From NCBI GenBank assembly GCA_030704615.1, contig CM060732.1:54994001-55058000 (forward strand): DNA of 64,000 bases, read 5' to 3'. The stretch comes from Takakia lepidozioides. Lineage: Eukaryota > Plantae > Bryophyta. Position numbers and translations under genes: made by a program. Below are positions 30,693 to 47,742 of this stretch, piece after piece. The notes under the pieces were generated by a model. It saw only the letters and a list, made by a program, of their open reading frames with translations, was not told where the DNA came from and searched no databases. How positions within the stretch are numbered: the first letter of the stretch is position 1; each line of letters begins with the position of its first letter.

Positions 30693-31889
30693 AGACACAT
30701 CTCATATTTACTCCACATTATTTCCCCTCACAGCCGTAGCCCAACACACCTGTATTTTTCTTACCCCTCTATCCTGAGGGGTTTTCCCTAAAACACAAAA
30801 GTGCCTGCTATGGCCATTTTGGCGTTCACAGCCAGAATGATTGATCTTCAGAACTTCCCAGGGGTGTTAGAATAGGTGCAAAGCAACCATTGAGATTGAC
30901 AGGGATCCCCTGCCTTGTGCAAATGTCTGCTTCTATATGTTTGACAGCTGGGAGCAAGATGCTTCAATTGGCTTCATTCAGACAGTCTCGTACTCACTTC
31001 TATTGATAGGTTGGGACTGGAGCCCTGTCTGGCATCTTCACAAATCCTTCTCTGACTGTCTGTAGAGGCTGGTTCTGAAAGCTTTGCAGACCATGGGTGC
31101 TGGAGAGGGGAAGCTACATAATGTAGATCAAGGCTTTATCATCTTAGAACACTAGAATTTAATAACTGGGAGCTAAGTTGTGATTAGTGTTTGCATTTGG
31201 TTCGTCGATTGCTGGTGGAACTGCTGTCCATGTAACAGTGTAAAGTTGTCTGCTGAATTGGAAGAAATACTTCTGACCCACCTGTATGTGCTTGAGACCC
31301 AGTCATGATTGTGTGCAACTGAACACTAATTGCTGTATGACAGTGACTTTATTCTGCAGCAGCTTCAGACTTCATGTTGGGTCAGTATTCACTTGTGTGA
31401 TCAAAGCACTCTCTAGACATGTGACGGATGTTGAAATACTTAGTTTCAAGATTCAACTTGGAATGGCACTAGACATTAAATGCCTGGTAATTCTGTGTTG
31501 CAGTTGAGAGGCAACATCAAAAATAGTGGATACAGTTGGAGACATGTCTAGAATCCAAGAAAAGAAATGACCATGGATTTCAACCTGGGAGAAAAAAAAT
31601 AGAAAACCAAGAGTTATGGGGTCTGAACCAATAAAGAGACAAAAATAAGATTGTCCTGGACTGGCACAGGGAATCTCTGTCACCCTGACCAATTGTCTTC
31701 CACACTAGACTAGAGGTCTCTTTGTTGAAGCTCAATGTACATTGTTGATTTCAATGCTATAGTTATTTCCCTCCATCGAGAGGAGACTCTGCATTTTGTG
31801 TGGCACAAACTTGATTCAACTCTTTCCTAAATAATGACAATTGACGATGACCTTTTCCCCTCAAATTTGGACAGCACACATGCCTTGGT

Positions 31890-34800
31890 TCACCAGTAAT
31901 TGTTACAGGAACAAACTCCATCTTCAAAATGATGGAAACGGTTGGCATCCCGTACAATAACTGCTCGCCTGGCAATCTTTGAAATGAACTTTGTGGCGGT
32001 GTGGCAGTCATCACATATCCGAAGGTTCTTTATGATACGGATAGGCATCCCAGGGGGTGTGCGGATGAGCCCAAAAGCAATGGCCAGCTTTTCACTGTGA
32101 TGAAAAAGAGAGAGTTCCTTTTGCTCCTCTTCCACATCATGCAATACAAAGCGCGTGTCAGGCACGTACCCGGCCTCCTTCATGTGCACAGCCAATCTCC
32201 TCAGCTCTGCGTGGATTTCCTCAATTTGTGGATGCAATTTGTCTTCTACCAGGAATGTATGGACCTGGTTGTCCACCTCAATGCAGCTGTGCCCTGCTTC
32301 CTTTCTGACACCTCTGTCCTCCATCATCTTTCTCACCTTCGCCTTATCGTCCCACCTGCCAGCCGCAGCATATATGTTCGATAACAACACGTATGCTGCA
32401 GCATGCTGTGGATCACTCTTGATGATGCTTTTGGCTGCACGTTCTGCTACCTCCACAGCACCATGAGTTCTGCAGGCACTAAGTAAGATCCTCCAAATCC
32501 GAGCACCTGGTTGGGTTGGCAGTTTGTTAATGAAGTCCTCCGCCTCATCCAGTCGCCCTGCACGGCCAAGAAGGTCCACCATACAGCCAAAATGCTCCAC
32601 CGTAGGGGCAAGGCCATGATCTCGACTCATGGAATCAAAGTAGCGACGGCCATCATCTACTAGGCCCACATGACTACATGCAGAAAGTAGAGATATAAAG
32701 GTGACTCCATTGGGCTTCAAGCCTTCCTTTTGCATCTGTTCAAATAGTTGCAGGGCCTCCCTACCACATCCATGCTGAGCATATCCTGCAATTATTGCAC
32801 TCCATGAGATGACATCTCGTTGGCCCATATTGTCGAAAACTTGACGTGCATCCTTCATGCTCCCACATTTCGCATACATGTCAACAAGGGCAGTCTCCAG
32901 TTTTATATATGATGCAACTCCAGCTTTGCCAATATGAGCGTGGACCTCTTTGCCCTTTTCCAGGGTTCCTAGGCTGGCACACGCATTGAGAACACAAACA
33001 AATGTGACCCTGTTAGGTGTCACCCCTTCCAGCTGCATCTGCTCATACATCTGAAAAGCCTCCCTACCACATCCATGTTGAGCATATCCTGTGATCATAG
33101 CATTCCATGAGACCACATTTCGTTCAACCATATTGTCGAACACTAGACGCGCATCCTTCATGCTCCCACATTTTGCATACATGTCAGCAAGGGCAGTCTC
33201 CAGAATGACATCTGCCGCAATTCCAGCTTTGATGATGTCAGCATGGACCGCTTTGCCCTTTTCCAGGGCTCCTAGGCTGGCACATGCATTGAGAACAGAA
33301 ATAAAAGTCACGCTGTTGGGCATTACCCCTTCCCGTTGCATTTGCGCATAGGTCTTCAAAGCTTCTCTACCATGCCCCTGGTGGGTATATCCCGCTATCA
33401 TTATAGTCCAAGTAAACAGGTTTCGTTCGGGCATCTTGTCGAACACTTGGCGTGCATCTACCACCCTCCTGCACTTGGAATACATATTCATTAGCGTGTT
33501 GGATATGAAGATATTTGGCTTGAATCTACTTTGGATAATGTGGGTGTGCACCTGCTTTCCCTCTGCTAGGGCTTTCAAGTTGATGCACTCCTGCAAGAGA
33601 CAAAAATATGTATGGGAGTCAGCCTGAATGCCTTGTTGGTTCAAAATGTTCAGTGCCTCTTTCAGTTGTCCTGCCTTACATAGCATCCTTATATCTCCAC
33701 AAGTGCGTGAAGAGTTCTTGTTGACTCCCTCTCTTGGTCCTCTTTCCAAAGTAGTGGTCATGGTGGAGGCATTAACCCCGCTGCCATTCTCATGTCCGAC
33801 AATTAACTGCGCTTGGTTCGCCGCTGGTATCCTGCATGACTCCAGTCTCTTAGCTACAAATTTATATTATGCTCACACCTACATATAAAGGGATCCTAGA
33901 TACTTCAAAGAAAGGTCCCTCCATTCTTGATGCATATCAACAGGGTTACAAAAGCCTTGCAGTCATCTGATTCTGCATGAAGACAATACCCATTGCATTC
34001 TTGGCCTGGAGCTCCATGGTACATATCGACATTACAACCACCGCCTGATTGTGCTTGACGTTCTAGCATGGCAGCAAGCTCTGCTTTCACCCAAGGGGGA
34101 TTCAACCGACCGTCAATCCAAAGGACCTCCTTTGTGCGCTTGTGTCTGAAGTCTGGCGATCTTGGACCTCTCTGTAGAAACCGCTAAGCAGTAATGCCTT
34201 TAACGTCAGCCCATATGCACCAAGGTACAGCCACCAAATCTCCACAAGCATCACTTCAAACAACAGGACACACCATTGAACAAACGAACTTCAGTGCGAT
34301 TCAATTCACAATCAGCTGATTCAAGAAAGAAAAAACAGCTAGGTAGGTTTGACAGACACAGATTTTGGGCATTGATCAATTAACTGAAACAATTGTCCAA
34401 TCTACAGATGTACATATCACACCTAACCCATTCACAAAGGAGCACTGTCCTTGATCCTAGATAAGAAAAAATCAGTGGACAAAATACAGATAGCCTCACC
34501 TTATCAGACCTGTTGTCCCACCACTGCGAAGGATCTGACATGAACTCCTTCCAAAGCAGATCTATGCTCATTGTTTGGCCTGGATGCAAGCACCACTAAA
34601 CCATAGATCTTTAACAGCTCCTAATTGTGGGCGTCGCTCGTGAATGCTCTCCATTTTATTAACTCTCTCTCCCTCTCTTCGCCCGCCCCTGCCCTTTATC
34701 GAGGAGTGTGATTGGCAGTGCGATCACAGTCACACGGGTCCGACCATAAGCAAAGCTCATTGACCAAATTGTGTGGAGTTTATGCGCATCGAACACATAA

Positions 34801-35085
34801 GGGAGCATAGATCGTTCCAACGCAGAAAACGTCGACACCACAAAAGAATACGCAAAGAGTTGCAATGTCCATACCTATCTTCGGTTTTCCTGAAGGCTGG
34901 GGAGCCGTAACAGCCATCAATTGGAAGGGTCTTGCCCAGCTGGACGCCCATTCCAGTTCCGCATCCTGGCCCGCTAATCTGATGCATGATGTAAGTCCTG
35001 CTGCCCATTCACCGCAAGGAGAAGGCAGCGCCTTTTTTAAGGCGTCTACCTGGGCTGGCAGTACAGCACCAGAGCACCCTGCCAT
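31890..35085 (-). CDS. PLS-class PPR protein with E1-E2-DYW deaminase (organellar C-to-U editing factor) and N-terminal OSB-type PDF motif; predicted exons 35085-34875, 34579-34500, 34171-33990, 33831-31890
   Basis: Eleven clear L/S/P repeats, E1/E2, HSEK...CDDC and terminal NYW. The upstream exons splice in frame (phases 1, 0, 2) and encode LWKEFMSDPSQWWDNRSDK|RGPRSPDFRHKRTKEVLWI. The start codon is less certain than the rest. Confidence 0.88.
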
Positions 35086-35195
35086 CGCTCCAGAGATCGA
35101 AGAAGGGCCACAGTGAGAAGAAGGGCCCGTGTGGGATGAAGGCACTCAGGGTGGATGAACACGTGTCCTAGATATGTAAACCTGGACGTTGGCTT

Positions 35196-35198
<3 letters not shown>

Positions 35199-35237
<39 letters not shown>
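35199..35237. repeat. (GA)n microsatellite in the divergent promoter/5' UTR region
   Basis: About 19 GA units between two head-to-head start codons. Confidence 0.9.
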
Positions 35238-35238
<1 letters not shown>

Positions 35239-35337
35239 AGGGAATTCACATTGCGGGAAAATTAGGGGCAGACCTGAAGGCGGAAGGTGTGTGGGTTTGG
35301 GCAAGAGAGGAGGGATCAGGAAGAAATTGGCGGCGTC

Positions 35338-36241
35338 ATGGCACTGACCAACTTCATTCTCACTGTGGTGGGCGTGGGCGCGGCATACATTGTGTTGCAA
35401 GGGGACGTGCGCAGGTCGGCCGTGACACTACGCCGAAATTTGAAGCACATCCGCCATTGGCTGGAGCAGGAGCATCCCTCCCCTGAGTCTGGTATCAAGT
35501 ATGTGAAACCCTCTCTCTATTTGTCTCTCTGAATGAAATGGTGTTGCTGCAGTATGCAATCCGAGCAGTTAAGGTAGAGGCCTACAGTGACAGGAAATTT
35601 TGTCTAATCTGAAGTTGATGCAAATGCACCTCGTCACTCCCCTATAACTGGTTTATCGTTGGCTGCGCTCTAGCGCTTTGGTGATTCTGGGCTGAACTCG
35701 ATACCCTGGTGGGTAAAACTGGATTGGAAAGAGAGATCTTATGGCTCCGTTGGTCGGTATCCCGCATTTGCTATGTCTTATAGTACACGGTCACTGAGTT
35801 CATCTATTGGAGGCTACTGCAAGTGCAGGGTAATGAGCAGAGGTTCTAGATCTTGTTTCCTGGGCGTATACTGGGTGCTTCGACGCTATTGTAATTATCG
35901 CAACGGTCCTGGAGGTTGTAAACCCATAAATTTCGGCTCTTTTACCCACTCAATCCACTCTTGTACTAAATTCCAGCTTTCCCACTAGCATCAGAAAGAT
36001 GAAGTCTTCGGATAGAACACAAGTTTAGTGGTTGGCATGTGTGTCTTAATCTGAAGTTCATGCTTCCAGTCGAGGAGTCTTGCAGCCCCAGTGTACCTGT
36101 TTGTGGATTTCGTTGTGGTCCTGTGGAGAATTACTCAGTACTGATTGGCATTTTCCTTTGTGCAGGGCTGGGCAGGCTAAGGTCAGGGAGGTAGAGCCCA
36201 GAGCATCAGAAAAGACTGCAGTGAAAGAGGAGAAGCACTAG
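35338..36241 (+). CDS. Small conserved plant protein of unknown function (about 78 aa, N-terminal hydrophobic segment); exons 35338-35498, 36166-36241
   Basis: MALTNFILTVVGVGAAYIVLQGDVRRSAVTLRRNLKHIRHWLEQE resembles a conserved land-plant small-protein family. A phase-2 GT-AG intron leads to ...VKEEKH*. Confidence 0.8.
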
Positions 36242-38251
36242 GCGTGTTGCTTGCAGGAAACTTCTTCAATTTAGGGTTCTTTGCAGGTCATTCTCATGGA
36301 TTGTGCGGTTGACTCTGGTATGTTGTTATCTCTTTCTCGGGGAAGTAGGACCAACTCAATGTATGCTGATTCACTGCCAAGTTTATTGCAGCGATCAGTC
36401 TGATGAGCACTTGGGAGGGCCTTGAAAGAAGCCCCAATTATCTCCAAAGAGTTGACTCCATGATGACATTTGACTCTAAAAGGGGCCTTAATGTTGAGCG
36501 TTCTGTCTCCCTTATCCTCTGTCCCCAGTTTCAACAAGGATCATTGATGGACTGTGTCCCTCTTGTTACAATATGTAGTACGTCTTATATTTCTTAATAT
36601 ACCCGTCCCCTCAGGTTGAAACCCCTTAAATCTGTTCAGTCCCACTTTGCAGGAATTTGGAAACAATCACCATCACAGTAGTGAGTACTTTGTTTTGACT
36701 CCTCTCTATGTAACATTGTTTTTTTCCATGTTACATGTCTCAAAAGGTCGCACTGATGGGTGATGCAGACTCCTTCACTTATGGTCATCCTTCATCGACT
36801 ATCATGTTGCTCCCAGACAATCTGGAGTGTGGGAGTTGGTTTTCATCTGTATCCAGGGTATGGGTACATTTGGGCAGCTTGAGGGTTGAAGGGATCTTCA
36901 CAGGCCTAGAGAGTAGTTTTAAATATCTTCACATGCGCCATCTTTTTCAGATTTTGATGTGATTTGATGTTAGTAAACATGTACAGACTACTTTAGCCAG
37001 CACTACGCACAGCAAGACTGTAGCTGGCCCTGCTATGTGAATACATTCTAAAACTAGTATCTTGCATTGTAATTTAGGAGGATCCTGTGCTGATGAAAAG
37101 GTGCTGCACTGCATATGTAAGGCCATCCCCCTATGAAAAATACGAGCCCCTGCGGGTTCACATGTACTCAGAGAGATGTTGGAACAATGCCCCTTGTCAC
37201 ACACAATCAAGACCACATTGAAGGTGAAGCACCTTCAGGCCTGAGATAGAGGGTAAAAAACTTAGCTGGGATCTATCCCATACAACAACCCAGCGGCCAA
37301 TTGCATCCTCACACCCCACTGACCAAATCATTTAAGCACTTACCACGTGATCAACTGCTAATATTATGCTGTCATTGAACTTTGCCCAGTGAGCCTAGAT
37401 GTCAGATTCAGACTTCTACCTTCCGCATCCACACAGTTAGATTGAATTCCAACTGAAGAAACCTTGCCACGGGAACATGATTTGAAATGGAAGCCACGCT
37501 GACATGTTAAGGTTTGTACTTGCTCATGCTTATCCCAACCTGGCCTTTGGACTCTATTTGGTGTCCATGCTTTTGTACACAGACTCACCCACCACCACAC
37601 ATTGCTGAGTACCACACACACCTTTGACTCTGTCTAACCTGCAGTATCCATGTTACACTTGGCCTCATGCTGAGCATGTGCAGTAAGACGGTCATCTACA
37701 AAGTGAGTCCACTGACTAGGGTCAGCCATCCCTGCATTAACTGGCGCCCTGTGTGAAAGAGAAATACACTTCCTATCATACATAACTGGAAAGGACTAAA
37801 CTTATTAGTGCTGGAGCGCACTGCTGTTCTGCTGTTCTGTATGCAAATGTTACAAGGCCGGGGGGTCATCAAGAGCACAAGTCTAGCAAGAAACTTGGCA
37901 ACTTCATACCTTAACTTCAACTCTCACAACTTCTGACCATTTGAAAATTAGGAATATATTCTGGTTGATTGTTCTCTTTGCAAACTTCTATCAACAATGA
38001 GAGCATGCTCCTCCTGAATTTTCGCACTCTTAACCTGGGTACACATTCAGAAGACCAATTTTCAGATGGAAAGTTTTTGGGGCTCAATTTTTGGATGACA
38101 GATTACCAATATATTTAGTCAAACTTCCCCATTATGTTAGCCACTTTCAGTAGTCAACTTGTGTTGAAAACCAAAACAGTAGGACAGCCTGCCCTTGCAT
38201 GGACTGTTCTGACTCCAGAAATCTATTAAAACGTTCAGCCGCTGTGAGGCT

Positions 38252-38672
38252 AGATTCCGGGTTTATTCCTCTCTATCCCAGGAAATTACCTGCATTGGGG
38301 ATGTATGCCTTGTAGAGCGAGCACGCTAAATAGGGGGGAATCTTCCAACAACTTAACACAAAGAGCCACTTTTCATCCAACACAAGTACACCAAATGAGA
38401 TAAAATATGCAGCACCCGTTCTCTTGAGTGCTTTGATTTATATAGTACTTAAGCAAGTAATCTTATCTAGGCCAAATGGCTGCCTTCTATTGGTTAGCCA
38501 GATGCCATCCTAGCTGGACCACACAAACCTGCCACATCCTCTAATCTGATCCTAATCTAACTGTTAACTAAAGACAACATCAACTTAATATAGCCAGCTG
38601 TACCAACATCTAATGTGTAACGGGTACTCCACCTACATCCAGCTAAGTTTAACTGAAAGCCTCATCCGGTGT
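38252..38672 (-). repeat. Direct repeat A (LTR core), 3' copy
   Basis: Nearly identical to 44799-45222 with a few substitutions and indels. Confidence 0.9.
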
Positions 38673-38871
38673 GTGCTAGAGATGGCATCAGATTGTACCA
38701 GGCTTGGGGTTTTTCCACTTTGATCTTTTCTCCTTCGCCCACCTTGCAGGGCAAGGTTTTGTTCATTTGGTTTTTTCATCCCAAGCTTGATTGGATGCCT
38801 AATTTTGTTATAGATCCCTTGTTCACTTTTCCTTGATTGCTCGCTGGACTTGCTTAGTTAGTGGGGCCTTA

Positions 38872-38972
38872 AGCCTCACATATGTAAGGGCTTGATTCCC
38901 ACCTGCTGGCTTTTGGGCATGGATGAATGGTATCGTGGATGGAGCAGGATGGTGATGCTCATTCAGGCTAAC
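38872..38972 (+). repeat. Internal complementary region: inverted copy of the element's 3' terminal 9 nt + TA + 5' terminal 90 nt
   Basis: 38883-38972 is the reverse complement of 45228-45317 (88/90 identical); 38872-38880 (AGCCTCACA) is the reverse complement of 38243-38251. Confidence 0.88.
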
Positions 38973-39266
38973 TCAAAGACTAACTATGGCTCAGATTCGA
39001 CAGATTGCAGGCGGGAGAGAGGAGCCTTAGTTGGAGTATAAATCACCTATCTATTTTCCACATTCAAACATGTCAAGTCAAATGTTAGAGTGCAAAGAAC
39101 TAAGACACATGGACTGAACCAGCCAGATGAGGAGTGGAAGAGTGTTGTGGGAGGAGCACATACTATCTACCTGGAAGAATTTCAGTGATAAGGTAAGGGC
39201 CATCTATGCGCCGTTTAGCCTTAGAGACTTGCTTCCCTAGTTGCAATCGGACACAAACAGATTGTC

Positions 39267-42200
39267 CTAATTTAAAAGACTCAGAATAAACAACCTACGG
39301 TTATAATACTTAGCCTGAGATGCCAGAGCAAACTGGATATTGGACTTGGCAATCTCACGAAGCTGCCGGCGTTTAGCATCCATAGTAAGCACACGTTTAG
39401 TGGCCGACACCTGCAACCACGAAATATGCAAAGAGGTACGGCACTTCCTGCCATACAACAACTTAAAAGGAGAAAGCTCAGTACTAGCATGAATAGAGTA
39501 CGATAAGCAAACAACAGAGTTGGAACAACCATGTCCCACTCGTCAATCAAAGTCCCATTCTTCTCCAACATCTGACACATGGTCTTGTTAAAACGCTCCG
39601 TCAAGCCACTGCATTGGGGGTTATAAGGGGCAGTCACCACATGACTAGTATTCACGTTAAACAAGACAATATCCATGAGTTGGTTACAAAACTCGGTACC
39701 TTGATCCGTGAGGATCTCAATGGGACATCCATGGCGGAGGATCACCTTGTCAAAGAAGAATTGAACCTTGCATGGCTCAAATTTATGCAGGGCCTTTGCA
39801 TTCAAAGCCATGCATTCAAAAGGTGGCATAAAGCGAAAGGGTCAGTAATAGCAAGAGCAGGAATAGGTTGAGTTGTGGGAGAGGGAACAAGAAGCAAGTC
39901 ATCAAGGCTGGTGTAAGAGGCTGCTCACTTAGTTTCCCCATGAGTAAGGGCGTCAGCATTGATGTTGTCTTTGCCCCGCTTGTAGGTAATCTTGAAATCA
40001 TAAGCATGTAGAATCAGCGCCCATCTAGCTAACCTCCCAGTTAGCTCCCTAGGAGTAAGCAAAGCTTTCAATGGAAGGTGATCAGTTTCAATTACAAATG
40101 GGCATCCATGAAGGTACTGGCGAAAATACTTCACACCAAAAATTACAGCTAAGCCCTCTTTGTCTATGATACAGTAGTTGCATTTATGTTTATCTAAGCG
40201 TCGAGAGGCATAGGCCACGACATGTTCCCACCCATCATGAACCTGGCTGAGCACTGCAGAGATTGCCAAATCACTGGCGTCAGTTTGTAGCAGAAAAGGT
40301 AAGGTGAAGTCTGGATAAGCAAGAACAGGGGCAGAAGTCAAGGCGATTTTGAGCTTTTCAAAGGCAGAGGTTGCAGCGAGGCCCCAAACAAAACGTGTAT
40401 CTTTGGACAAGAGCCGAGTCAAGGGTGCGGCAATCTTTGCAAATTGAAAGATGAATCTGCGATAAGAGCCTAATCCAAGAAAAGCTTTGACACAGTGCTT
40501 GTCTTTGGGTGTGGGATACTCCCACACGGCTCGGATCTGATTGGGATCAGGACTGATACCAACAGCAGAAAGGAGGTGGCCAAGAAAGTGCAGCTGTTCT
40601 ATACAGAAGTCGCACTTCTTTGCTTTAACTTTAAGTCCTGCGGCACGAAGTCTGCATACCACTCTTTGCAAGTCCAACATATGAGCTTCAAAGGTAGTAG
40701 AGTAAACATTGATGTCATCTCTATAAACAAGTGCACATTCCCATCGTAAGTTACCGAGACCACATCCATCAGTCGCTGAAATGTAGCAATGGCATTACAA
40801 AGCCCAAAAGGCATGGTCTCAAACTGATACATGCCCATCCTGCATGTAAAAGCAGTGAGGGAGTGAGAGGTACTTGCCAGAACCCAGCAGCAAGATCTAA
40901 GGATGAGAAAATCGTGGCACCATTGAGCTGATCTAATGTCTCATTAATGCGAGGAAGAGGGTACACATCACGTTTAGTAAGAGCATTCAACCGGCGAAAC
41001 TCAACACAAAATCGAGTGAAGCCATCCTTCTTACCTACTAACACAATAGGGCTGGCCCATGGAGAGATAGAGGGAGTGATTACGCCTGCATCAAGCATGC
41101 GGGTGATTTCCTCCTGGATGATCTTGCATTCACGAACACTTTCCCGGTAGGCATGTTGTTTGACAGGGGAGCCATCAGTGACTATGTCATGTTGCAAAAT
41201 ATCAGTTTTTCCAAGATCATGAGGACCACGGCTAAAGATATCTAGATTGCAGCGAATGAAAGAATGAAGCTGATGCATCTGGGGAGAGGTTAGATGATCA
41301 CCAACCTTAATGTCCTGGAGCACTTGCTGGAAATGAGCTTCCTCGTCAGGGGTCAGGCTGGGGCTGACAACAGGACCACGATGAGCAGCAAAACTTTGTA
41401 GTTGGTCAACAGGGGAGTCAACTAACCCAATATCTTGCAAGTTGAGGGCTGACTGCACAGTCGTTACATCGGAGAGTGGCACGGCAGTCAGACGTGCAAG
41501 CACTTGCCCTTCGCGGATGGAGACAGTAATGCGTTCGGGATTAGCAATAAGAAGCCGGGTTTCTCCTTTGAACCCTCGGTCAAGGACACCAGCAGCAATG
41601 AGGCAGTGTTTCTACAAGGCTAACTTCTGCCACCCTTCAATTTCTAAAAAATGACCCTCAGGACATAGAAATGCAAGCCCTGTGGGAACAATTCGCTGAG
41701 AAAAGGCAGGGATGACAAAGTCAGTAGGAGCCCTTAATAGAAGTGAATTTTTTGGTATAGGAAAGGGAGCACTGCCCTTGCTGCCAGGGGCAGGAAATTG
41801 CCATTGATGCAAGCAGTTATCCACAGGTTGGAATTGACTGAAACAAGACCAGTTGTAGGCCAGTCCCACTTGATCCCGCATTGCAGCAGCTTGCAACTTG
41901 GTTTTGGCATAGTTGGTCATAGATGTACCAGCAAGCAAGGTCACAGGCGACAGATTGACTTTGTAAGGACTGCCCTCTCCGTTGTGCAGCCACATCACAT
42001 GTCCCATGATGTCAAGGCTAGCTTCAGCCCCTTGCATCCAATCCAGACCTAACAAAAACTGTTCCCCAAGAGTGACAATACATGTCAGTACCACGCTTTT
42101 GCCACTGACTCTGATGGGCAAGGTGACCAAGCCTATAGGTTCATAAGCAGTCCCATCTGCAATGGAAACAGACAAACCCTTGGCTGATTGCAGTTTAAGT

Positions 42201-43640
42201 CCTAAGATGCGAACCACACTGAGAGGGATGGCAGACATTGTACACCCTGTATCAATAATGCAGGAGAATGAAAGGTGACCAACATGACATTGGGTCATCA
42301 ATGGATACACTCTGAGTTCGCTGACCTTGCGAAGGGCCTTACAATGTAGCAACTTGAAATCTTGAGATAGGACCGCACTTACCAGGGAGAGAGGGCTGAG
42401 GAGACGATCGCCTGGCACCCTCACAGACGACCGTTTTAAAGCTCCCTTCTTCTCCTTTTTAAGCTGCTCAATTAAAGCTAGCAAATCTGACTGATAAGGG
42501 CACCAGCGAGTGTAGTGTTCCATGGACTTACAGATCATGCAAGCGGATAATGAGGCTTTATTCACATACCTCGTGCCGGGTTGGGATTTGCCCCTAAAGC
42601 CACCCTGCATGGGCTCTTGTTGATTCTGGCTAGAAGGATCAGATCCCGAGGCACGCCAAGTAGCCTCATTTTTCATCGCCAGGAACTGTTCTTGAACATC
42701 ACTACGAAACTGGCTCAACTCATGAACCAACGTGGGCAGTAGCTGATCTGTAGTAATGGTCACCTCAGGATGCACATCAGCGAGGTTAGTGTCCTTACTA
42801 ACAGCCAAAAAATTCGTAGCCTTGAGAGGGGAGGGGCTCATGCCAGCCTTGGCTGCCTTCAATCTAAGTCGTTCCTCCAGTTACCTACCATCTCATTTTC
42901 ATGGTGATTATGTTGTTTTTGTAAAAAGACCCTGTCAGCTGGGGGTAACCTTTGATGAAGCAATGCTTCCGGATAGCTGAGCGTTCAGATGGATCGTCCA
43001 CTGCCTTACATACGGCTGTACGAAGATCAGAGTAGTACTTCCAAATACTGTCACCAGGGGCGAAGGTTAGCTCAGGAACTGTGTAAGCAATGGGCTTCAC
43101 TTCGCGAAACAATCTATCTGCCAATTGCCTAGCTTCCTCCCAGGTCAGCTCGTTCTTTCCTTTAATGCTGGACTCAAAAATCTTCCTAGCCTCACCTTTT
43201 AAACACAAACGGAAGGCCTTGACAATGAACTTCCGAGGGACAGAGTTAATTTCTCTACTGATCTCAAAAAACTCTAGAAAGGATTCAAAGTCTTCACCCA
43301 AGTTGAAATCTGGAAAGGGTTGTTTGTGCATCCTCTCAGACGAATCAATGGGTTTGTTACCTGTTGTCACCGGAACATTTTGATTGATCAACATTTTCAT
43401 CAAAGGTGGACAATTAGATATGACTCCCATAGCCTCACAAAGCTCTTCTACATCAAGAGCTGACTCATGAGCAGCCTTATCTTTTTCTACCCTCCATGAC
43501 CCGTAGATCCTTCACCATGCGCAGCTTCACTCCGGTCAACAGCTAACTCTCTCTCTCTTCTAGCTTCAAGCTCACTTAAGCCTACCATTTCCTCAGTCTC
43601 CTTTTCCAGCATGGCCCTAGTGTGGACAGGCATGAGCATG
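39267..43640 (-). pseudogene. Degenerate gag-pol: gag, CCHC knuckle, aspartic protease, dUTPase-like domain, RT, RNase H, partial integrase
   Basis: CMICKSMEHYTRWC, IIDTGCTMS, AGVLDRGFKGE, SPWASPIVLVGKKDG...MPFGLCNA, LQTDASD...ETDHLPL and ILTDQGTEF...GLTERFN. The integrase N-terminus appears deleted. Confidence 0.9.
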
Positions 43641-43652
43641 GGCTAACACCTC

Positions 43653-44610
43653 TTACCTCCTATCCGCTAGGGCCTGAATGAAGTCTTCCCAGTTCGCCAC
43701 ACAATGGCAGCTGATGTAACGCTGTTTGGGCCAAAGATAGACGACATCTCCCAATTGTTGCCAGACTTCCCGTTCACTTTTGAGCAAAAAGGCAACCTTG
43801 ACCACCGTACGCACTCTTCGCTCTTTAACTACCAGTGTGTGCGGAGGGTAATCAGCCGCCTTGTCCAATTGAGTCAGTCCAACACGTTCTTGTTTGAAAG
43901 ATCGGCCTGGAAACACTACCACGTCCGATGGATGGTGGTGAAAGCGCTGTTCCAGAACACCCGCCACAACCTCTTCCCAGGTGGGGTCGGCCTCCTCGGA
44001 AACAACACCGTTCAGACGAAGGTTGGCAAACACAAGGGCAATACCGCCTTTAATGAATTCCCAAAGTCGCAATGGACCTGGCTTGTGAGGGTGGCGCGGG
44101 GAGGTCGCGGCGCGGGGAGGTCGCTGCCCCCCCCAAATGCAGTAGTGCATGAACTTCCAATTCAGTGTGTATGTCCCTGCTCATTGTGAACTGCAGCACA
44201 CCTATTTGAGGCCAGCTAAAAACCTCACCAGCACGCATGCGCTCCTGAAGCTCGGGAAAAGGGAGCTTCATAGCAATCTCCTCGGCATGCAGTACCTGCA
44301 ACAACTTCCCAGCCTAGGCACCCTGCAAGGCTTGTTCCACCTTGCGCTTCTGCTCACGTTTTTGAGCAGGTGTGATGGCCTCTTTGGCCGCTTCCTCCGC
44401 CGCCTCAACTTCAAATTTGGCAATCCAAAAATCCGAGGGTGTATCTAACTGAAGTTCCTCGCGGGGCCAGGGTTCATTCTCATCAAAGGCAGTATATCTG
44501 CAAATCTCATCGCTCAAACGCACCCTCAACTCATGCAGAAAAGTCTGCTCAAATTTTTGGTCAGGCGTGAATTCGCTAATGATAGGAACAGACTCAGAGG
44601 GAGACGCCAT
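43653..44610 (-). pseudogene. Extra ORF (about 320 aa, one stop, one frameshift) between the PBS and gag of the gypsy element
   Basis: ORFs 44314-44622 and 44050-44304 are in the same frame, separated by one TAG. The frame shifts at the run near 44127-44134 into ORF 43653-44150, which stops just before the gag ATG. Confidence 0.6.
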
Positions 44611-44778
44611 TGCACACAACAAGGAGAAACGCAGCTAGCTTGAACACGAAAGAGAAGAAGACATACAAACGAAAAGTGAGACTCGCCGCCATTTCGCCTT
44701 TCTGAAGGCTGTACCTTATGCCCTTGCCACACACACAACACCTGTGATGATTAATACATTCGTTCCGGTAATAGATTA

Positions 44779-44798
44779 GATGCCCCCCATCTCCACCA
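44779..44798 (-). promoter_or_regulatory. PBS complementary to the 3' end of tRNA-Ala
   Basis: Minus strand TGGTGGAGATGGGGGGCATC versus the recalled plant tRNA-Ala complement TGGTGGAGATGCGGGGTATC. Confidence 0.75.
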
Positions 44799-45222
44799 AG
44801 ATTCTGGGGCCGTCGGATTATTCCTCTCTATACCGGGAAATTACCTGCATTGGGGATGTATGCCTTGTAGAGCAGAGCACGCTAAGTAGGGGGGGAATCT
44901 TCCAACAACTTAACACAAAGAGCCATTTTTCATCCAACACAAGTACACCAAATGAGATAAAATATGCAACACCCCGGTCTCTTGAGTGCTTTGATTTATA
45001 TAGTACTTAAGCAAGTAATCTTATCTAGGCCAAACGGCTGCCTTCTATTGGTTAGCCCGATGCCATCCTAGCTGGACCACACAAACCTGCCACATCCTCT
45101 AATCTGATCCTAATCTAACTGTTAACTAAAGACAACATCAACTTAATATAGCCAGTTGTGCCAGCGTCTAATGCTACTCCACCTACATCCAGCTAAGTTT
45201 AACTGAAAGCCTCATCCGGTGT
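44799..45222 (-). repeat. Direct repeat A (LTR core), 5' copy
   Basis: Nearly identical to 38252-38672 and directly abuts the PBS. Confidence 0.9.
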
Positions 45223-47742
45223 CATTTGTTAGCCTGAATGAGCATCACCATCCTGCTCCATCCACGATACCATTCATCCATGCCCAAAAGCCAACAGGTG
45301 GGAATCAAGCCATTACACCGCGAAGCTCCAAAATATGAGTTCAACGACCGATCAAATTTTACTATCATTACAAAAGCTTCAACAAACTCTGTTTACAACA
45401 TAGGGCACAGTTATTTTCTACAACAAACTTTCCAGCCCTATGAAATGGTTAGCCACCCATAAGGCCAACAAAACTCTGATTAACATCTAGTGCAAAACAG
45501 AACCGAGTGCAGGCTGCAGTTAGTTAGAAAACCGGCGATGCAGCCCACAAATCTGGCAATGGAGAACCTTCTAGGTCAGCAACGCAGTTCCAAAACCAGT
45601 TTGATCCCCTTGTACCTTCCCCAACTAACCTCTCTGCTTGTACAGTAACTGACCAAGAAGAAATGGATGAAAACATGACCATTGAAGAATGATGAAATAT
45701 TATAAGTGTACAATCTTATGGGTTCTTAAATTTATTATGATGAACACATTGCGTAATTAGCCGCTTGTTTTCCTGAAGGACTTTCTTGAACTTATAATAA
45801 TCTTACTTATGATGCACGGAAGTAGTAAGTTGGTGATCATTTCCTGCAGATAACTATGTATGATCCACATGACTGGATGGCCCTGCACCTCCTCTGCAAC
45901 AGGCTTCATCCACTTTTCCAGTTTTCAAACACTTGTCCCAGAGCCTGCTCACATACTCAACTCAACTCCCAGGGACTGTGCACTAGGTACTACCCAAACA
46001 GTAGACCGGAGCTGTAACTGCCTCCTCCACACACTTTGAAGCGGCCAATGAGATGAGATGAGAAGAGATGACTCGGGAGAGAGAGATGAGAGATGAGAGC
46101 AGACATGAGGGAGAGAAGAGGTGAGGGAGAGTTGAAAGGGAGTCGTGGAGCGTGGTGACACGAACTGCGGTGTTGACGAGCACATGCCATGAGCCTTCCG
46201 TAGTGGGGATCCTGAAGCAGCCGGCAAAAAGTGGTGGGCCTTTTGGCGAAACCTCAGATGTGGGGTATAGCCAGGTCATTGACCAATCTGAAAGTGAGAC
46301 CCCTACCTACATTTTCCTAGCTAGTACTGGGAGAGTACACAAGTAGCCACTTATGGCGTCCAGTACTCTTAAGGGCCCTCCCCTTGCTCCTTCTCATTTA
46401 TCGCCCGGGCAGATATCATTTCAAGTTGGGCTACATAGTGGGCTGGTGCTTCTCCCCTTGAAGAGATTGCGAAGCTCTTGGGCGCTTTGACTGAAGAGTA
46501 CTTGGTGAGCTTGAGGCGCCCTGCACGCATTGTTTGGCCTGCCTTCCCACACCCAAACAATTTTCGGTAAGCGTCTAGAGGCCGCACAGATTTAGGTTGG
46601 GTTCACCTCATAGAGGAGGGCCATCCTGAAGTCAATCTAAGACATCCTTAGACACTCGACACTCTCGACACTCGAGTCAGTGGCTGCTGTTTTGGGAACT
46701 CTACAATACTATCTTTGGCTTTCACAAGTTTTTTTTTTTTTTTTTTTCTGCTACCCATAACGGTACAAAGAAAAATGTAGACAGTTTTTGCTGATTTTTC
46801 TTGTGAGAATGGCTGATTTGGAAATAACAAAAAATAAAAACCCCACCAAAACACAGGCTCTAGTCTTCTAATTTCTGTGGTCAAATTTTTCAAAGATTGT
46901 GGGAAGGATGCATGCGGTAAAATGTAAGGCTAACTTTTTTGGATGTAACATGGCTGGTTTCACTACCCAGGGATACCAAAAATTGGGAGGAAAGAAAGCT
47001 CTATGTATGTTAAGGGTTAATTTCAATGTTTTCTCTTAAAAGATAGAGTTCCCTTTTTAATAAATAAAATAAAAAGATAGAGATGAAGATAAAGTTTTAA
47101 AGGAGAAGAAGGACCAAAAAAACATAAGCCCTAAACTTTTGCAGGTTACTGACTGTTGGAAATTAGGTCACGGGCTCCTTGCCGGCGGCAAGCCTGGCGC
47201 AAGAATACGACACGCAGGTCGGCATGGGCGGACCTTACGAGAGCACGAGGCGCGCACAGTCATAATATGCACCCCCCTCCTCGCTCTAGATGTTGCGGCC
47301 TCCGCACGTGCCTGCATGCCTTATCCACGCGACCTGCCAGATCGGCGGGTGGCCCGATGAATGACGACCGACTTTTCTCATCCGCAAGTGGAACGGAATC
47401 AGTTATGGATATGGACGGACTGCAACCGAACCTCGATTTAATTATTTTATATGTCTGATTTATTGGCGCGCAATGATTAGCATTAATGATCGTCCCATGT
47501 TCCGTTTATCACCATCCTCACATTGGTACTTGAGCTGGTCCTGGGTTCAACCCTCCAACGCGTGGATGCCTTCCACCCACTGAGAACTCAAAAGAAAGAG
47601 AAATTTGCGATAAGTAAAGTCTATTTCATTCAATGCTTCTCAACTGGAATCACTTTATTGCGCTTGTTTTATATCAAAGAATAAAAATAAAAGGGGAGGA
47701 AGCCCTTGAGAGCTTTATTTAGCTTGCCAGATTGAAACTTAG

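What the first reader, a model, noticed from the sequence alone, without database searches (positions are those of the whole stretch)
31890..35085. RNA-editing PPR-DYW deaminase fused to an OSB-type PDF ssDNA-binding motif
Seen: the 623-aa PPR-DYW ORF is not the whole gene. Three upstream exons with canonical, phase-matched splice sites add DLLWKEFMSDPSQWWDNRSDK|RGPRSPDFRHKRTKEVLWIDGRLNPPWVKAEL. Established: this pattern (W...WWDNR...PDFKHK...LW...P.W) is the PDF motif of plant organellar ssDNA-binding OSB/PTAC9 proteins. The DYW domain keeps HSE and CxxC. Inference: the deaminase may be tethered to nucleoid ssDNA or R-loops for co-transcriptional editing, or may even be brought to DNA substrates. 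Similar fusions may already exist in fern or bryophyte annotations, but I know of no functional study.
Basis: partly seen in the sequence, partly recalled or inferred. Interest (0 to 1): 0.85.

Follow-up and report, generated by a model that had tools for sequence, protein, structure and literature searches.

The report
RNA-editing PPR-DYW gene with OSB PDF module
This is an intact, transcribed plant gene for an organelle RNA-editing enzyme (PPR-DYW type) whose front end carries the small 'PDF' module otherwise known from OSB proteins that bind single-stranded organellar DNA; the combination is old, shared by liverworts, mosses, clubmosses and ferns, and I found no paper that describes it.

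Summary
On the minus strand, four exons (35085-34875, 34579-34500, 34171-33990, 33831-31890) with GT..AG sites and matching phases add up to 2415 nt, that is 804 codons plus a stop. Transcript contigs of the same organism leave the three introns uncovered. One contig joins exon 3 directly to the PPR exon.

Exons 2 and 3 together encode one PDF module. A profile built from the same N-terminal module of seven PPR proteins finds 1281 proteins. These include SSB-fold plus PDF proteins and Physcomitrium patens 'protein OSB1' (89 bits).

The intron inside the module lies at the same residue and phase 0 in this gene, in a Ceratodon PPR-DYW gene and in P. patens OSB1. This fits capture of the module from an OSB gene, intron included.

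PDF plus PPR proteins are annotated as 'hypothetical protein', 'unnamed protein product' or simply PPR protein in Diphasiastrum, Ceratodon, Sphagnum, Calypogeia and Adiantum. None appeared among the many gymnosperm homologues examined.

The deaminase centre (HSE, CxDCH) is intact, but three minority variants occur (AG, SC, NYW).

What the module does in an editing factor is untested. Tethering to single-stranded nucleic acid is an inference.

The scan has already found this fusion at eight or more other places in this genome, so the family is the novelty, not this locus.

The parts
35086..35188 (-). 5' untranslated part of exon 1. It holds no ATG upstream of 35085.
   Evidence: X1 record 7 covers 34874-35188 with 0 mismatches. 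ATG count is 0 in 35086-35188.
34875..35085 (-). Exon 1 coding part: 70 codons plus 1 nt. This is a non-conserved N-terminal region, presumably holding the organelle-targeting sequence.
   Evidence: Transcribed (X1 record 7, X2 record 14). No conservation with the N-termini of homologues. No Pfam hit.
34580..34874 (-). Intron 1 (295 nt, GT..AG)
   Evidence: Zero contig depth over 34582-34843.
34500..34579 (-). Exon 2: first half of the PDF module (...LLWKEFMSDPSQWWDNRSDK). It also holds an in-frame ATG at 34572-34570, just before the motif.
   Evidence: 39.7 bits to the PDF profile, positions 4-26. Aligns colinearly with PDF-PPR proteins. Covered by contigs.
34172..34499 (-). Intron 2 (328 nt, phase 0), inside the PDF module. 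Its position is shared with the Ceratodon PPR gene and with P. patens OSB1.
   Evidence: Zero depth over 34189-34450; paralogous contigs join at 34500.
33990..34171 (-). Exon 3: second half of the PDF module (34076-34171, RGPRSPDFRHK...LWIDGRLNPPWVKAEL), followed by the start of a low-complexity linker.
   Evidence: 55.6 bits to the PDF profile, positions 21-59. X2 record 13 covers 33989-34172.
33832..33989 (-). Intron 3 (158 nt, GT..AG)
   Evidence: Skipped by X2 record 13, which lies on 33660-33830 and 33989-34172..
31890..33831 (-). Exon 4: linker, PLS-type PPR array, E1/E2 motifs, DYW deaminase and the stop codon.
   Evidence: ORF. Pfam PPR families, E_motif, Eplus_motif and DYW_deaminase.
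32466..33698 (-). PPR array. By my reading of the repeats it is S, three P1-L1-S1 triplets, then P2-L2-S2. Pfam counts 10 PPR stretches.
   Evidence: PF01535 6.1e-64, PF13041 4.3e-66. The motif order is read by eye from the translation.
32193..32465 (-). E and E+ motifs (Pfam names), corresponding to the E1/E2 extension motifs of the PPR literature (ORF residues 433-523).
   Evidence: PF20431 1.9e-17 and PF20430 3.1e-05.
31893..32171 (-). DYW cytidine deaminase domain (ORF residues 531-623). HSE and CDDCH are kept; the C-terminus reads NYW.
   Evidence: PF14432 3.9e-44. Matches PDB 9kfx at 1.3e-70 and 7o4e at 1.9e-45. Variant frequencies.
35189..35245 (.). (CT)n/(GA)n microsatellite lying between this gene and a divergently transcribed neighbour.
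   Evidence: Reported as a skipped repeat.

Best explanation
The locus is an intact, transcribed four-exon nuclear gene for an 804-residue protein. Its parts, in order, are a variable N-terminal region, one OSB-type PDF module, a linker of about 75 residues, a short PLS-type PPR array, E1/E2 motifs and a canonical DYW cytidine deaminase.

Shown here: the gene structure, the homology of the module to the OSB PDF motif, the conserved phase-0 intron inside the module, and the presence of the same architecture in liverworts, mosses, lycophytes and ferns. The shared intron indicates that an ancestor of this PPR family captured the PDF exons from an OSB gene by exon shuffling.

Inferred from the established function of PLS-DYW proteins: the protein enters an organelle, the PPR array reads the RNA just upstream of one or a few target cytidines, and the DYW domain converts C to U.

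Inferred more weakly (about 0.35): the PDF module, held on a flexible linker, is a sequence-unspecific grip on single-stranded nucleic acid. It would keep the editing factor at the transcribing nucleoid (displaced ssDNA) or on nascent RNA. This would raise local concentration or affinity in plants that lack the MORF-type helper proteins of seed plants.

The confidence given (0.8) is for the structural and evolutionary part, not for the role of the PDF module.
For: Gene model: (GT..AG sites, phases, 2415 nt, no stops).

Transcription and splicing: (zero depth in the introns; X2 record 13 joins E3 to E4; X1 record 7 ends at the E1 donor; exact-match contigs along E4).

PPR-E-DYW identity.

PDF identity:
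- Profile A2 finds 1281 proteins.
- P0151, P0155 and P0163 have a Pfam SSB domain followed by PDF copies.
- P0163's family includes 'protein OSB1, mitochondrial [Physcomitrium patens]'.
- The profile hits that protein's residues 258-314 at 89 bits.

Same architecture elsewhere: (Diphasiastrum, Ceratodon, Sphagnum species, Calypogeia, Adiantum, and a Pteridium fragment).

Shared intron, phase 0: WWDNRAKK|PSPKTPDF in OSB1, WWDNRVAK|INPRSPDF in Ceratodon, WWDNRSDK|RGPRSPDF here.

Origin: a single origin of the PPR-linked PDFs is not rejected (AU p 0.655). The label clusters on the tree (5 changes against 22 in shuffles).

Fold: the module is predicted to be an independent small domain (pLDDT 89).

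Literature:
- PDF motifs bind ssDNA (PMC6963530, PMC13393729).
- OSB1/2 prefer ssDNA to RNA (PMC4166229).
- Mosses lack the non-PPR editing helpers of Arabidopsis (PMC9459714).
Against: - No functional data exist for a PDF module in any PPR protein.
- PPR56 edits in E. coli without its N-terminus (PMC10482289), so a moss PPR-DYW core can edit without its native N-terminus. Whether PPR56 carries a PDF motif was not tested here.
- The E1/E2 and E2/E3 joins of this exact copy are supported only indirectly.
- The runs are labelled RNA only by guess, although a spliced contig and intron-free coverage argue for cDNA.
- The N-terminal 70 residues hold six acidic residues and do not look like a textbook presequence. 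No targeting predictor was available.
- The DYW domain has three minority variants: AG for PG (5 of 99 homologues), SC for SW (0 of 99) and NYW for DYW (2 of 120). A P-to-A change in the PG box lowered PPR56 activity (PMC10482289).
- Earlier notes report that several other copies in this genome are decayed.
Confidence: 0.8

Rival explanations
1. The PDF module in PPR proteins does not grip nucleic acid. Instead it is a protein-protein contact or oligomerisation piece. It might, for example, bind OSB or other nucleoid or editosome proteins, or make editing factors pair up.
For: - OSB2 assembles as a tetramer (PMC6963530).
- The module is rich in invariant Trp, Pro and Phe residues.
- The only weak fold resemblance is to WW domains, which bind peptides (E 5.8, not significant).
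- Editing in E. coli works for PPR56 cloned without its N-terminus (PMC10482289).
Against: - The cited work states that the PDF motif of OSB1 is sufficient for ssDNA binding (PMC6963530).
- The conserved basic residues (R19, K22, K/R31, H32, K33 in P0104 numbering) fit nucleic-acid contact.
- No interaction data exist.
Confidence: 0.2
2. This particular copy is a transcribed but functionally decaying member of the family. The architecture is real, but this protein no longer edits.
For: - Minority variants occur at three conserved DYW positions.
- A PG-box P-to-A change weakened PPR56 (PMC10482289).
- Earlier notes describe several broken PDF-PPR copies in this genome.
- The PPR array is short.
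Against: - The 804-codon frame is open across four exons, with canonical splice sites.
- All 13 nearly invariant PDF residues are kept.
- HSE and CxDCH are kept, and similarity to active DYW domains is very high.
- Exact-match transcripts exist in two studies.
- AG and NYW also occur in other full-length homologues.
Confidence: 0.12
3. The PDF exons are not part of the PPR protein. They would belong to a separate upstream gene or a non-coding leader, and translation would start at ATG 33761.
For: - The 623-aa ORF is complete on its own.
- The E1/E2 and E2/E3 joins of this copy were not displayed as single contigs.
Against: - X2 record 13 joins exon 3 to exon 4 in frame.
- The first AUG of the transcript (35085) and the AUG in exon 2 are both in frame with the PDF module and the PPR ORF.
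- Annotated proteins of six other genera have the same colinear order.
Confidence: 0.04
4. The PDF module brings the DYW deaminase to single-stranded organellar DNA, and the enzyme deaminates DNA cytidines. This would be a mutator or DNA-editing role.
For: Only that OSB PDF motifs prefer ssDNA (PMC4166229) and that the deaminase superfamily contains DNA deaminases (general knowledge).
Against: - The protein keeps a full PPR-E1-E2-DYW layout, which is the established RNA-editing layout.
- Target choice in this layout comes from the PPR array reading RNA.
- No evidence of any kind for DNA substrates.
Confidence: 0.03

Closest known systems
[quoted passage not shown]
   Same: - They carry the same roughly 55-residue PDF module, with the invariant W, P, WWD.R, K, PDF.H, LW and P.W positions (89 bits).
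- They have the same phase-0 intron inside the module.
   Different: - OSBs have an SSB-like OB fold in front of one to several C-terminal PDF copies and no PPR or deaminase.
- This gene has no SSB domain. Its single PDF lies at the N-terminus, in front of a PPR-DYW editing factor.
Moss PLS-DYW editing factors such as Physcomitrium PPR56 and PPR65
   Same: - The PLS PPR array, E1/E2 and DYW deaminase have the same layout.
- These proteins work alone as C-to-U editors in E. coli (PMC6397227, PMC10482289).
- This locus's DYW domain is very close to active DYW domains.
   Different: - The 2022 overview of all 107 P. patens PPR proteins lists RRM, LAGLIDADG, SMR, NYN, CBS and SAP as additional domains, but no PDF (PMC9459714).
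- The functional assays used proteins cut just before the first PPR.
- Whether any of the nine characterised factors has the module was not testable here.
PPR proteins with an accessory nucleic-acid-binding domain (maize PPR4 with an N-terminal RRM; PPR-SMR proteins)
   Same: A PPR array is combined with a second, unrelated nucleic-acid-binding or -processing module in one polypeptide (PMC9459714).
   Different: - Those are P-class proteins for splicing, stability or translation.
- Here a PLS-DYW editor is combined with a module known for ssDNA, not RNA.
MORF/RIP helper proteins of seed-plant editosomes
   Same: Possible functional analogy only: a non-PPR element that helps PLS-PPR editing factors engage their substrate.
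   Different: - MORFs are separate proteins with a different fold and act in trans.
- They are reported to be absent from moss genomes (PMC9459714).
- No sequence relation to PDF.
- The analogy is my inference and is untested.

Membership tests
PLS-class PPR-DYW RNA editing factors | Tandem PLS-type pentatricopeptide repeats | tested here: met
   PF01535 6.1e-64 (10 stretches) and PF13041 4.3e-66. The P1-L1-S1 periodicity is visible in the translation.
PLS-class PPR-DYW RNA editing factors | E1/E2 (E, E+) extension motifs between the array and the deaminase | tested here: met
   PF20431 1.9e-17 and PF20430 3.1e-05.
PLS-class PPR-DYW RNA editing factors | DYW deaminase domain with the zinc-binding HxE and CxxCH signatures | tested here: met
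   PF14432 3.9e-44. HSE and CDDCH align with the synthetic PPR-DYW 9kfx and with the At3g63370 DYW domain 7o4e.
PLS-class PPR-DYW RNA editing factors | PG box and terminal DYW tripeptide | tested here: inconclusive
   The sequence reads AG...SC and NYW. AG occurs in 5 of 99 homologues, NYW in 2 of 120 and SC in none. These are variants, not losses, and their effect is unknown.
PLS-class PPR-DYW RNA editing factors | Import into plastid or mitochondrion, and C-to-U editing of a defined site | not testable with these tools
   No targeting predictor, no organelle genome or transcriptome of this species, and no assay were available.
OSB family (organellar ssDNA-binding proteins) | PDF motif | tested here: met
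   E2 scores 39.7 bits and E3 55.6 bits to the profile that hits P. patens OSB1 at 89 bits. All nearly invariant positions are kept.
OSB family (organellar ssDNA-binding proteins) | SSB-like OB-fold domain N-terminal to the PDF motif(s) | tested here: not met
   No PF00436 hit in any exon translation, whereas the OSB-type hits have it. The gene is therefore not an OSB; it only shares the module.
OSB family (organellar ssDNA-binding proteins) | Preferential binding of single-stranded DNA | not testable with these tools
   Known for OSB1/OSB2 (PMC4166229, PMC6963530). Never assayed for a PPR-linked PDF.
PDF-PPR fusion family of seedless land plants (not described in the papers searched) | One or more PDF modules N-terminal to a PLS-PPR(-DYW) protein, in one reading frame | tested here: met
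   Exon phases, the spliced contig, and colinear alignment with P0020, P0086, P0104, P0030, P0067 and P0028.
PDF-PPR fusion family of seedless land plants (not described in the papers searched) | Phase-0 intron after the K that follows WWDNRxx, five residues before PDF | tested here: met
   Window junction 34500|34171, Ceratodon L002 2246|2555, and also P. patens OSB1 L001 2895|3038.

The most novel reading that the evidence does not exclude
In seedless land plants, a whole class of organellar RNA-editing factors is anchored by an OSB-derived PDF module to the single-stranded DNA exposed at transcribing or recombining nucleoids. Editing would then be physically coupled to transcription or DNA maintenance. 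The module would be the cis-acting forerunner of the trans-acting helper proteins (MORF/RIP) of seed plants, and it became dispensable when those arose.
Probability: 0.15. Interest if true: 0.8.

Novelty: new variant of a known kind. Interest (0 to 1): 0.6.

Why it matters
PPR-DYW proteins are the enzymes of plant organellar C-to-U editing and the basis of programmable RNA editors. OSB proteins guard organellar genomes against illegitimate recombination. A conserved, intron-marked transfer of the OSB DNA-binding module onto editing factors links two systems that have been studied separately. The fusion has been kept since before the bryophyte and vascular-plant lineages diverged.

It gives a concrete, testable handle on how editing factors of early land plants work without the helper proteins of seed plants, and on whether editing is coupled to the nucleoid.

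The module has no Pfam model and no solved or similar structure. That explains why the architecture sits unnoticed under 'hypothetical protein' or plain PPR labels in public annotations. A small, autonomous single-strand-binding domain could also be useful as an add-on for designer PPR editors.

For this locus alone the news is modest. It is one more intact and expressed member of a family that the scan has already met at eight or more other places in this genome.

Tried and rejected
- Pfam on the exon translations found nothing for the PDF exons. Pfam has no PDF model: P. patens OSB1 shows only the SSB domain.
- A word-indexed region search with the Ceratodon PDF part found only 3 proteins and was too insensitive. 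It was replaced by the exhaustive profile search.
- The window's own protein, or a near-identical one, was not among the listed homologues (best 58 % identity). No public annotation of this gene could be consulted.
- The look-up of encoding contigs had no record for P0231 or P0067, so the intron position was checked only in Ceratodon and in P. patens OSB1.
- Fold searches with the PDF model found no significant match. Foldseek against the PDB gave a best E of 5.8 (WW domains). VIA-align against 48,161 chains gave a best Z of 3.4. This is not evidence of a new fold.
- Aligning exon 1 with the N-termini of homologues showed no conservation. Nothing can be said about targeting.
- The first run of the one-clade test did not finish. 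The repeat did. The tree has only 66 columns and is weakly resolved.
- The original OSB paper (Zaegel et al. 2006) is not held. Its statements are cited second-hand.
- Literature searches found no paper linking the two: 'PDF motif' with pentatricopeptide or DYW, 'PDF domain' with PPR, WWDNR, and OSB with DYW.
- The spliced four-exon model was never joined. All searches were done exon by exon by reference, so no search, fold or targeting prediction of the joined 804-residue protein was run.
- A PPR-code target prediction was considered and dropped, because no organelle sequence of this species is at hand.
Full report
**What is in the sequence.** On the minus strand a 623-residue ORF (33761-31890) encodes a PLS-type PPR protein with E, E+ and DYW domains. 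Pfam gives PPR 6.1e-64, E_motif 1.9e-17, Eplus_motif 3.1e-05 and DYW_deaminase 3.9e-44.

A script that checks each piece separately gives:

| Exon | Coordinates | Length |
|---|---|---|
| E1 | 35085-34875 | 211 nt |
| E2 | 34579-34500 | 80 nt |
| E3 | 34171-33990 | 182 nt |
| E4 | 33831-31890 | 1942 nt |

- Every intron begins with GT and ends with AG. The entry phases are 0, 1, 0 and 2.
- No piece has an internal stop. The sum is 2415 nt, that is 804 codons plus the stop.
- The 103 nt between the microsatellite at 35189-35245 and the ATG at 35085 contain no other ATG.
- A second in-frame ATG lies in E2, just before the motif. Whichever start is used, the PDF module is translated.

All searches used single exons by reference, and nothing was run on the joined model.

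**Is it transcribed and spliced?** Two runs of the same organism from two studies hold about half of the sampled words of 31700-35600. That share is what a spliced transcript would hold. Laid on the stretch:

- Their contigs cover the exons and leave the introns empty (depth 0 in 34189-34450 and 34582-34843).
- X2 record 13, a 355-nt contig, lies on 33660-33830 and continues at 33989-34172. This is the E3/E4 junction; the one-letter shift is the G shared by both sides.
- X1 record 7 matches 34874-35188 without a mismatch and stops at the E1 donor, although at least 37 more letters of the contig remain. These therefore do not continue into the intron.
- Several contigs from paralogues join an E3-like part to an E2-like part exactly at 34500, with 10-11 differing letters next to the junction.
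- Summed depth on E2 and E3 is about 1000, against about 25 on E1. Many related PDF-bearing transcripts therefore exist in this plant.

The runs are labelled RNA only by guess, but a spliced contig and intron-free coverage are what cDNA gives. Direct single-contig proof of the E1/E2 and E2/E3 joins of this very copy was not among the rows shown.

**Is the motif the OSB PDF motif?** Pfam has no model for it, so I went through relatives.

- Among the 120 best PPR-DYW homologues, six carry the same N-terminal motif: three from Diphasiastrum complanatum, one from Ceratodon purpureus, one from Sphagnum fallax and one Sphagnum-type JGI protein. A profile scan added one from the liverwort Calypogeia fissa.
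- The window's E2 and E3 translations align end to end with these continuous motifs.
- A profile of seven such PPR-linked motifs (A2) was scored against 1.84 billion representative proteins. It found 1281 proteins at E <= 0.001 and 559 at E <= 1e-10.
- Most top hits are 260-560 residues long with two or more copies of the motif. P0151, P0155 and P0163 have a Pfam SSB domain in front of the copies, which is the published OSB layout (PMC6963530, PMC4166229, PMC13393729).
- P0163's relatives include 'protein OSB1, mitochondrial [Physcomitrium patens]' (P0298). The PPR-derived profile hits that protein's residues 258-314 at 89 bits.
- The window exons score 39.7 bits (profile positions 4-26) and 55.6 bits (positions 21-59). 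They are the only such hits in the six frames of the window.
- All 13 positions that are at least 90 % conserved over 142 PDF copies of both kinds are kept here.

The motif is therefore homologous to the OSB PDF motif. The gene is not an OSB, because the SSB-like fold is absent.

**Origin.** The intron inside the motif lies at the same place and phase in three genes:

| Gene | Junction |
|---|---|
| P. patens OSB1 | ...WWDNRAKK\|PSPKTPDF... |
| Ceratodon PPR-DYW gene P0030 | ...WWDNRVAK\|INPRSPDF... |
| This gene | ...WWDNRSDK\|RGPRSPDF... |

- In each case there is a GT donor directly after the AAG codon, so the phase is 0.
- A shared intron inside a 55-residue module points to a DNA-level transfer of the two PDF exons between an OSB gene and a PPR gene.
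- On a tree of 123 PDF copies the PPR-linked ones cluster (5 label changes against 22 in shuffles). A tree that holds them as one clade is not rejected (AU p 0.655).
- The alignment has only 66 columns, so this is permissive evidence for one origin, not proof.

**Distribution.** The architecture is annotated as 'hypothetical protein', 'unnamed protein product' or simply as a PPR protein in:

- Diphasiastrum (many genes)
- Ceratodon (at least two)
- Several Sphagnum species
- Calypogeia
- Adiantum capillus-veneris (two PDF copies)
- A Pteridium transcript fragment

Some members have two or three copies. None of the homologues that I take for Ginkgo, nor those named Cryptomeria, Pinus-type or Musa, has the motif. 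The Ginkgo assignment is my reading of the Gb_ gene identifiers. This is a biased sample and does not exclude seed plants.

**What the module looks like.** An AlphaFold model of the Diphasiastrum module, built with the 142-row alignment, is confident (mean pLDDT 89.2, pTM 0.73). It shows a helix, three short strands carrying WWD, FKH and LW, and a longer helix.

Foldseek against the PDB found nothing significant (best E 5.8, WW domains). An exhaustive VIA-align search reached only Z 3.4. So there is no solved analogue to borrow a mechanism from.

In this gene the module is followed by about 75 residues of low-complexity sequence before the first repeat. That fits an independent domain on a flexible tether.

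**The catalytic part.** The last 146 residues match the synthetic PPR-DYW protein of PDB 9kfx (1.3e-70) and the At3g63370 DYW domain of 7o4e (1.9e-45). HSE and CxDCH are aligned.

Three conserved positions carry minority residues:

- The PG box reads AG (5 of 99 homologues).
- The following SW reads SC (0 of 99).
- The C-terminus is NYW (2 of 120).

In PPR56 a P-to-A change in the PG box weakened editing, more so on the weaker target (PMC10482289). I therefore keep a 0.12 chance that this copy is drifting out of function, although its frame, splice sites and PDF residues are all intact.

**Mechanism.** That a PLS-E1-E2-DYW protein binds RNA upstream of a cytidine and deaminates it is established for the family (PMC6397227, PMC10482289) and inferred for this member. 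What the PDF adds is unknown.

- The cited work says the OSB1 PDF motif is sufficient for ssDNA binding and that OSB1/2 prefer ssDNA to dsDNA or RNA (PMC6963530, PMC4166229).
- Mosses lack the non-PPR helpers of the Arabidopsis editosome (PMC9459714).
- PPR56 edits in E. coli when cloned without its N-terminus (PMC10482289), so a moss PPR-DYW core can edit without its native N-terminus. Whether PPR56 itself carries a PDF motif was not tested here.
- My preferred reading (about 0.35) is an accessory, sequence-unspecific single-strand grip that concentrates the factor at the transcribing nucleoid or on nascent RNA.
- A protein-contact role is the main rival (0.2).
- Deamination of DNA has no support (0.03).

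**Novelty and context.** No paper in the searchable library combines the PDF motif or domain with PPR or DYW. The 2022 catalogue of P. patens PPR proteins lists six kinds of additional domains but not PDF (PMC9459714). The 2026 survey of OSB evolution required both an OB fold and a PDF, so it would not have seen these proteins (PMC13393729).

The scan itself has met the same fusion at eight or more other places in this genome, with follow-ups that reached the same reading. Some of those copies are intact and some decayed, and one note says the module came with its intron. My calls reproduce those points independently for this locus.

The family is a new variant of a known kind. This locus is one clean, expressed example of it.

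Noticed in passing
window 35246-35499 (+), with 35189-35245: This is the first exon of a divergently transcribed neighbour gene. Contigs of 865 and 798 nt cover it, and a GT donor lies at 35500. A 57-bp (CT)n/(GA)n run separates it from the PDF-PPR gene, so the two genes probably share a bidirectional promoter. The 54-residue ORF part, which looks like a membrane segment, has no Pfam hit.
   Followed up: partly
window 31893-32330 (-): The DYW domain of this copy carries minority residues at three conserved spots: AG for the PG box, SC for SW, and NYW for the terminal DYW. The zinc-binding HSE and CxDCH are intact.
   Followed up: partly
P0167 (profile hit, 1526 aa): A kinesin-motor protein (Pfam Kinesin 1.8e-86) has three PDF stretches in front of the motor. 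This is either another PDF fusion or a merged gene model.
   Followed up: no
P0123 (1160 aa), P0124-P0127: These proteins have 9 to 13 PDF stretches, far more than the one to five copies described for OSBs. P0123 has its weak SSB match near the C-terminus, not in front of the copies.
   Followed up: no
P0137 (1371 aa), P0152 (Adiantum), P0189 and P0273 (Diphasiastrum): These PPR proteins have two or three tandem PDF modules, so copy number varies in the PPR-linked family as it does in OSBs.
   Followed up: partly
window 38243-45317: Another first-stage note on this window flags a Ty3/gypsy element here (s1-473024). I did not examine it.
   Followed up: no
window 31962-33664, tables 2 and 5: Thousands of contigs (7248 in X1) of at least 90 % likeness pile up on the PPR exon, with many false 'joints' between repeats. 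This plant therefore expresses a very large PLS-PPR family. Depth and joints on this exon cannot be read as features of this gene.
   Followed up: no
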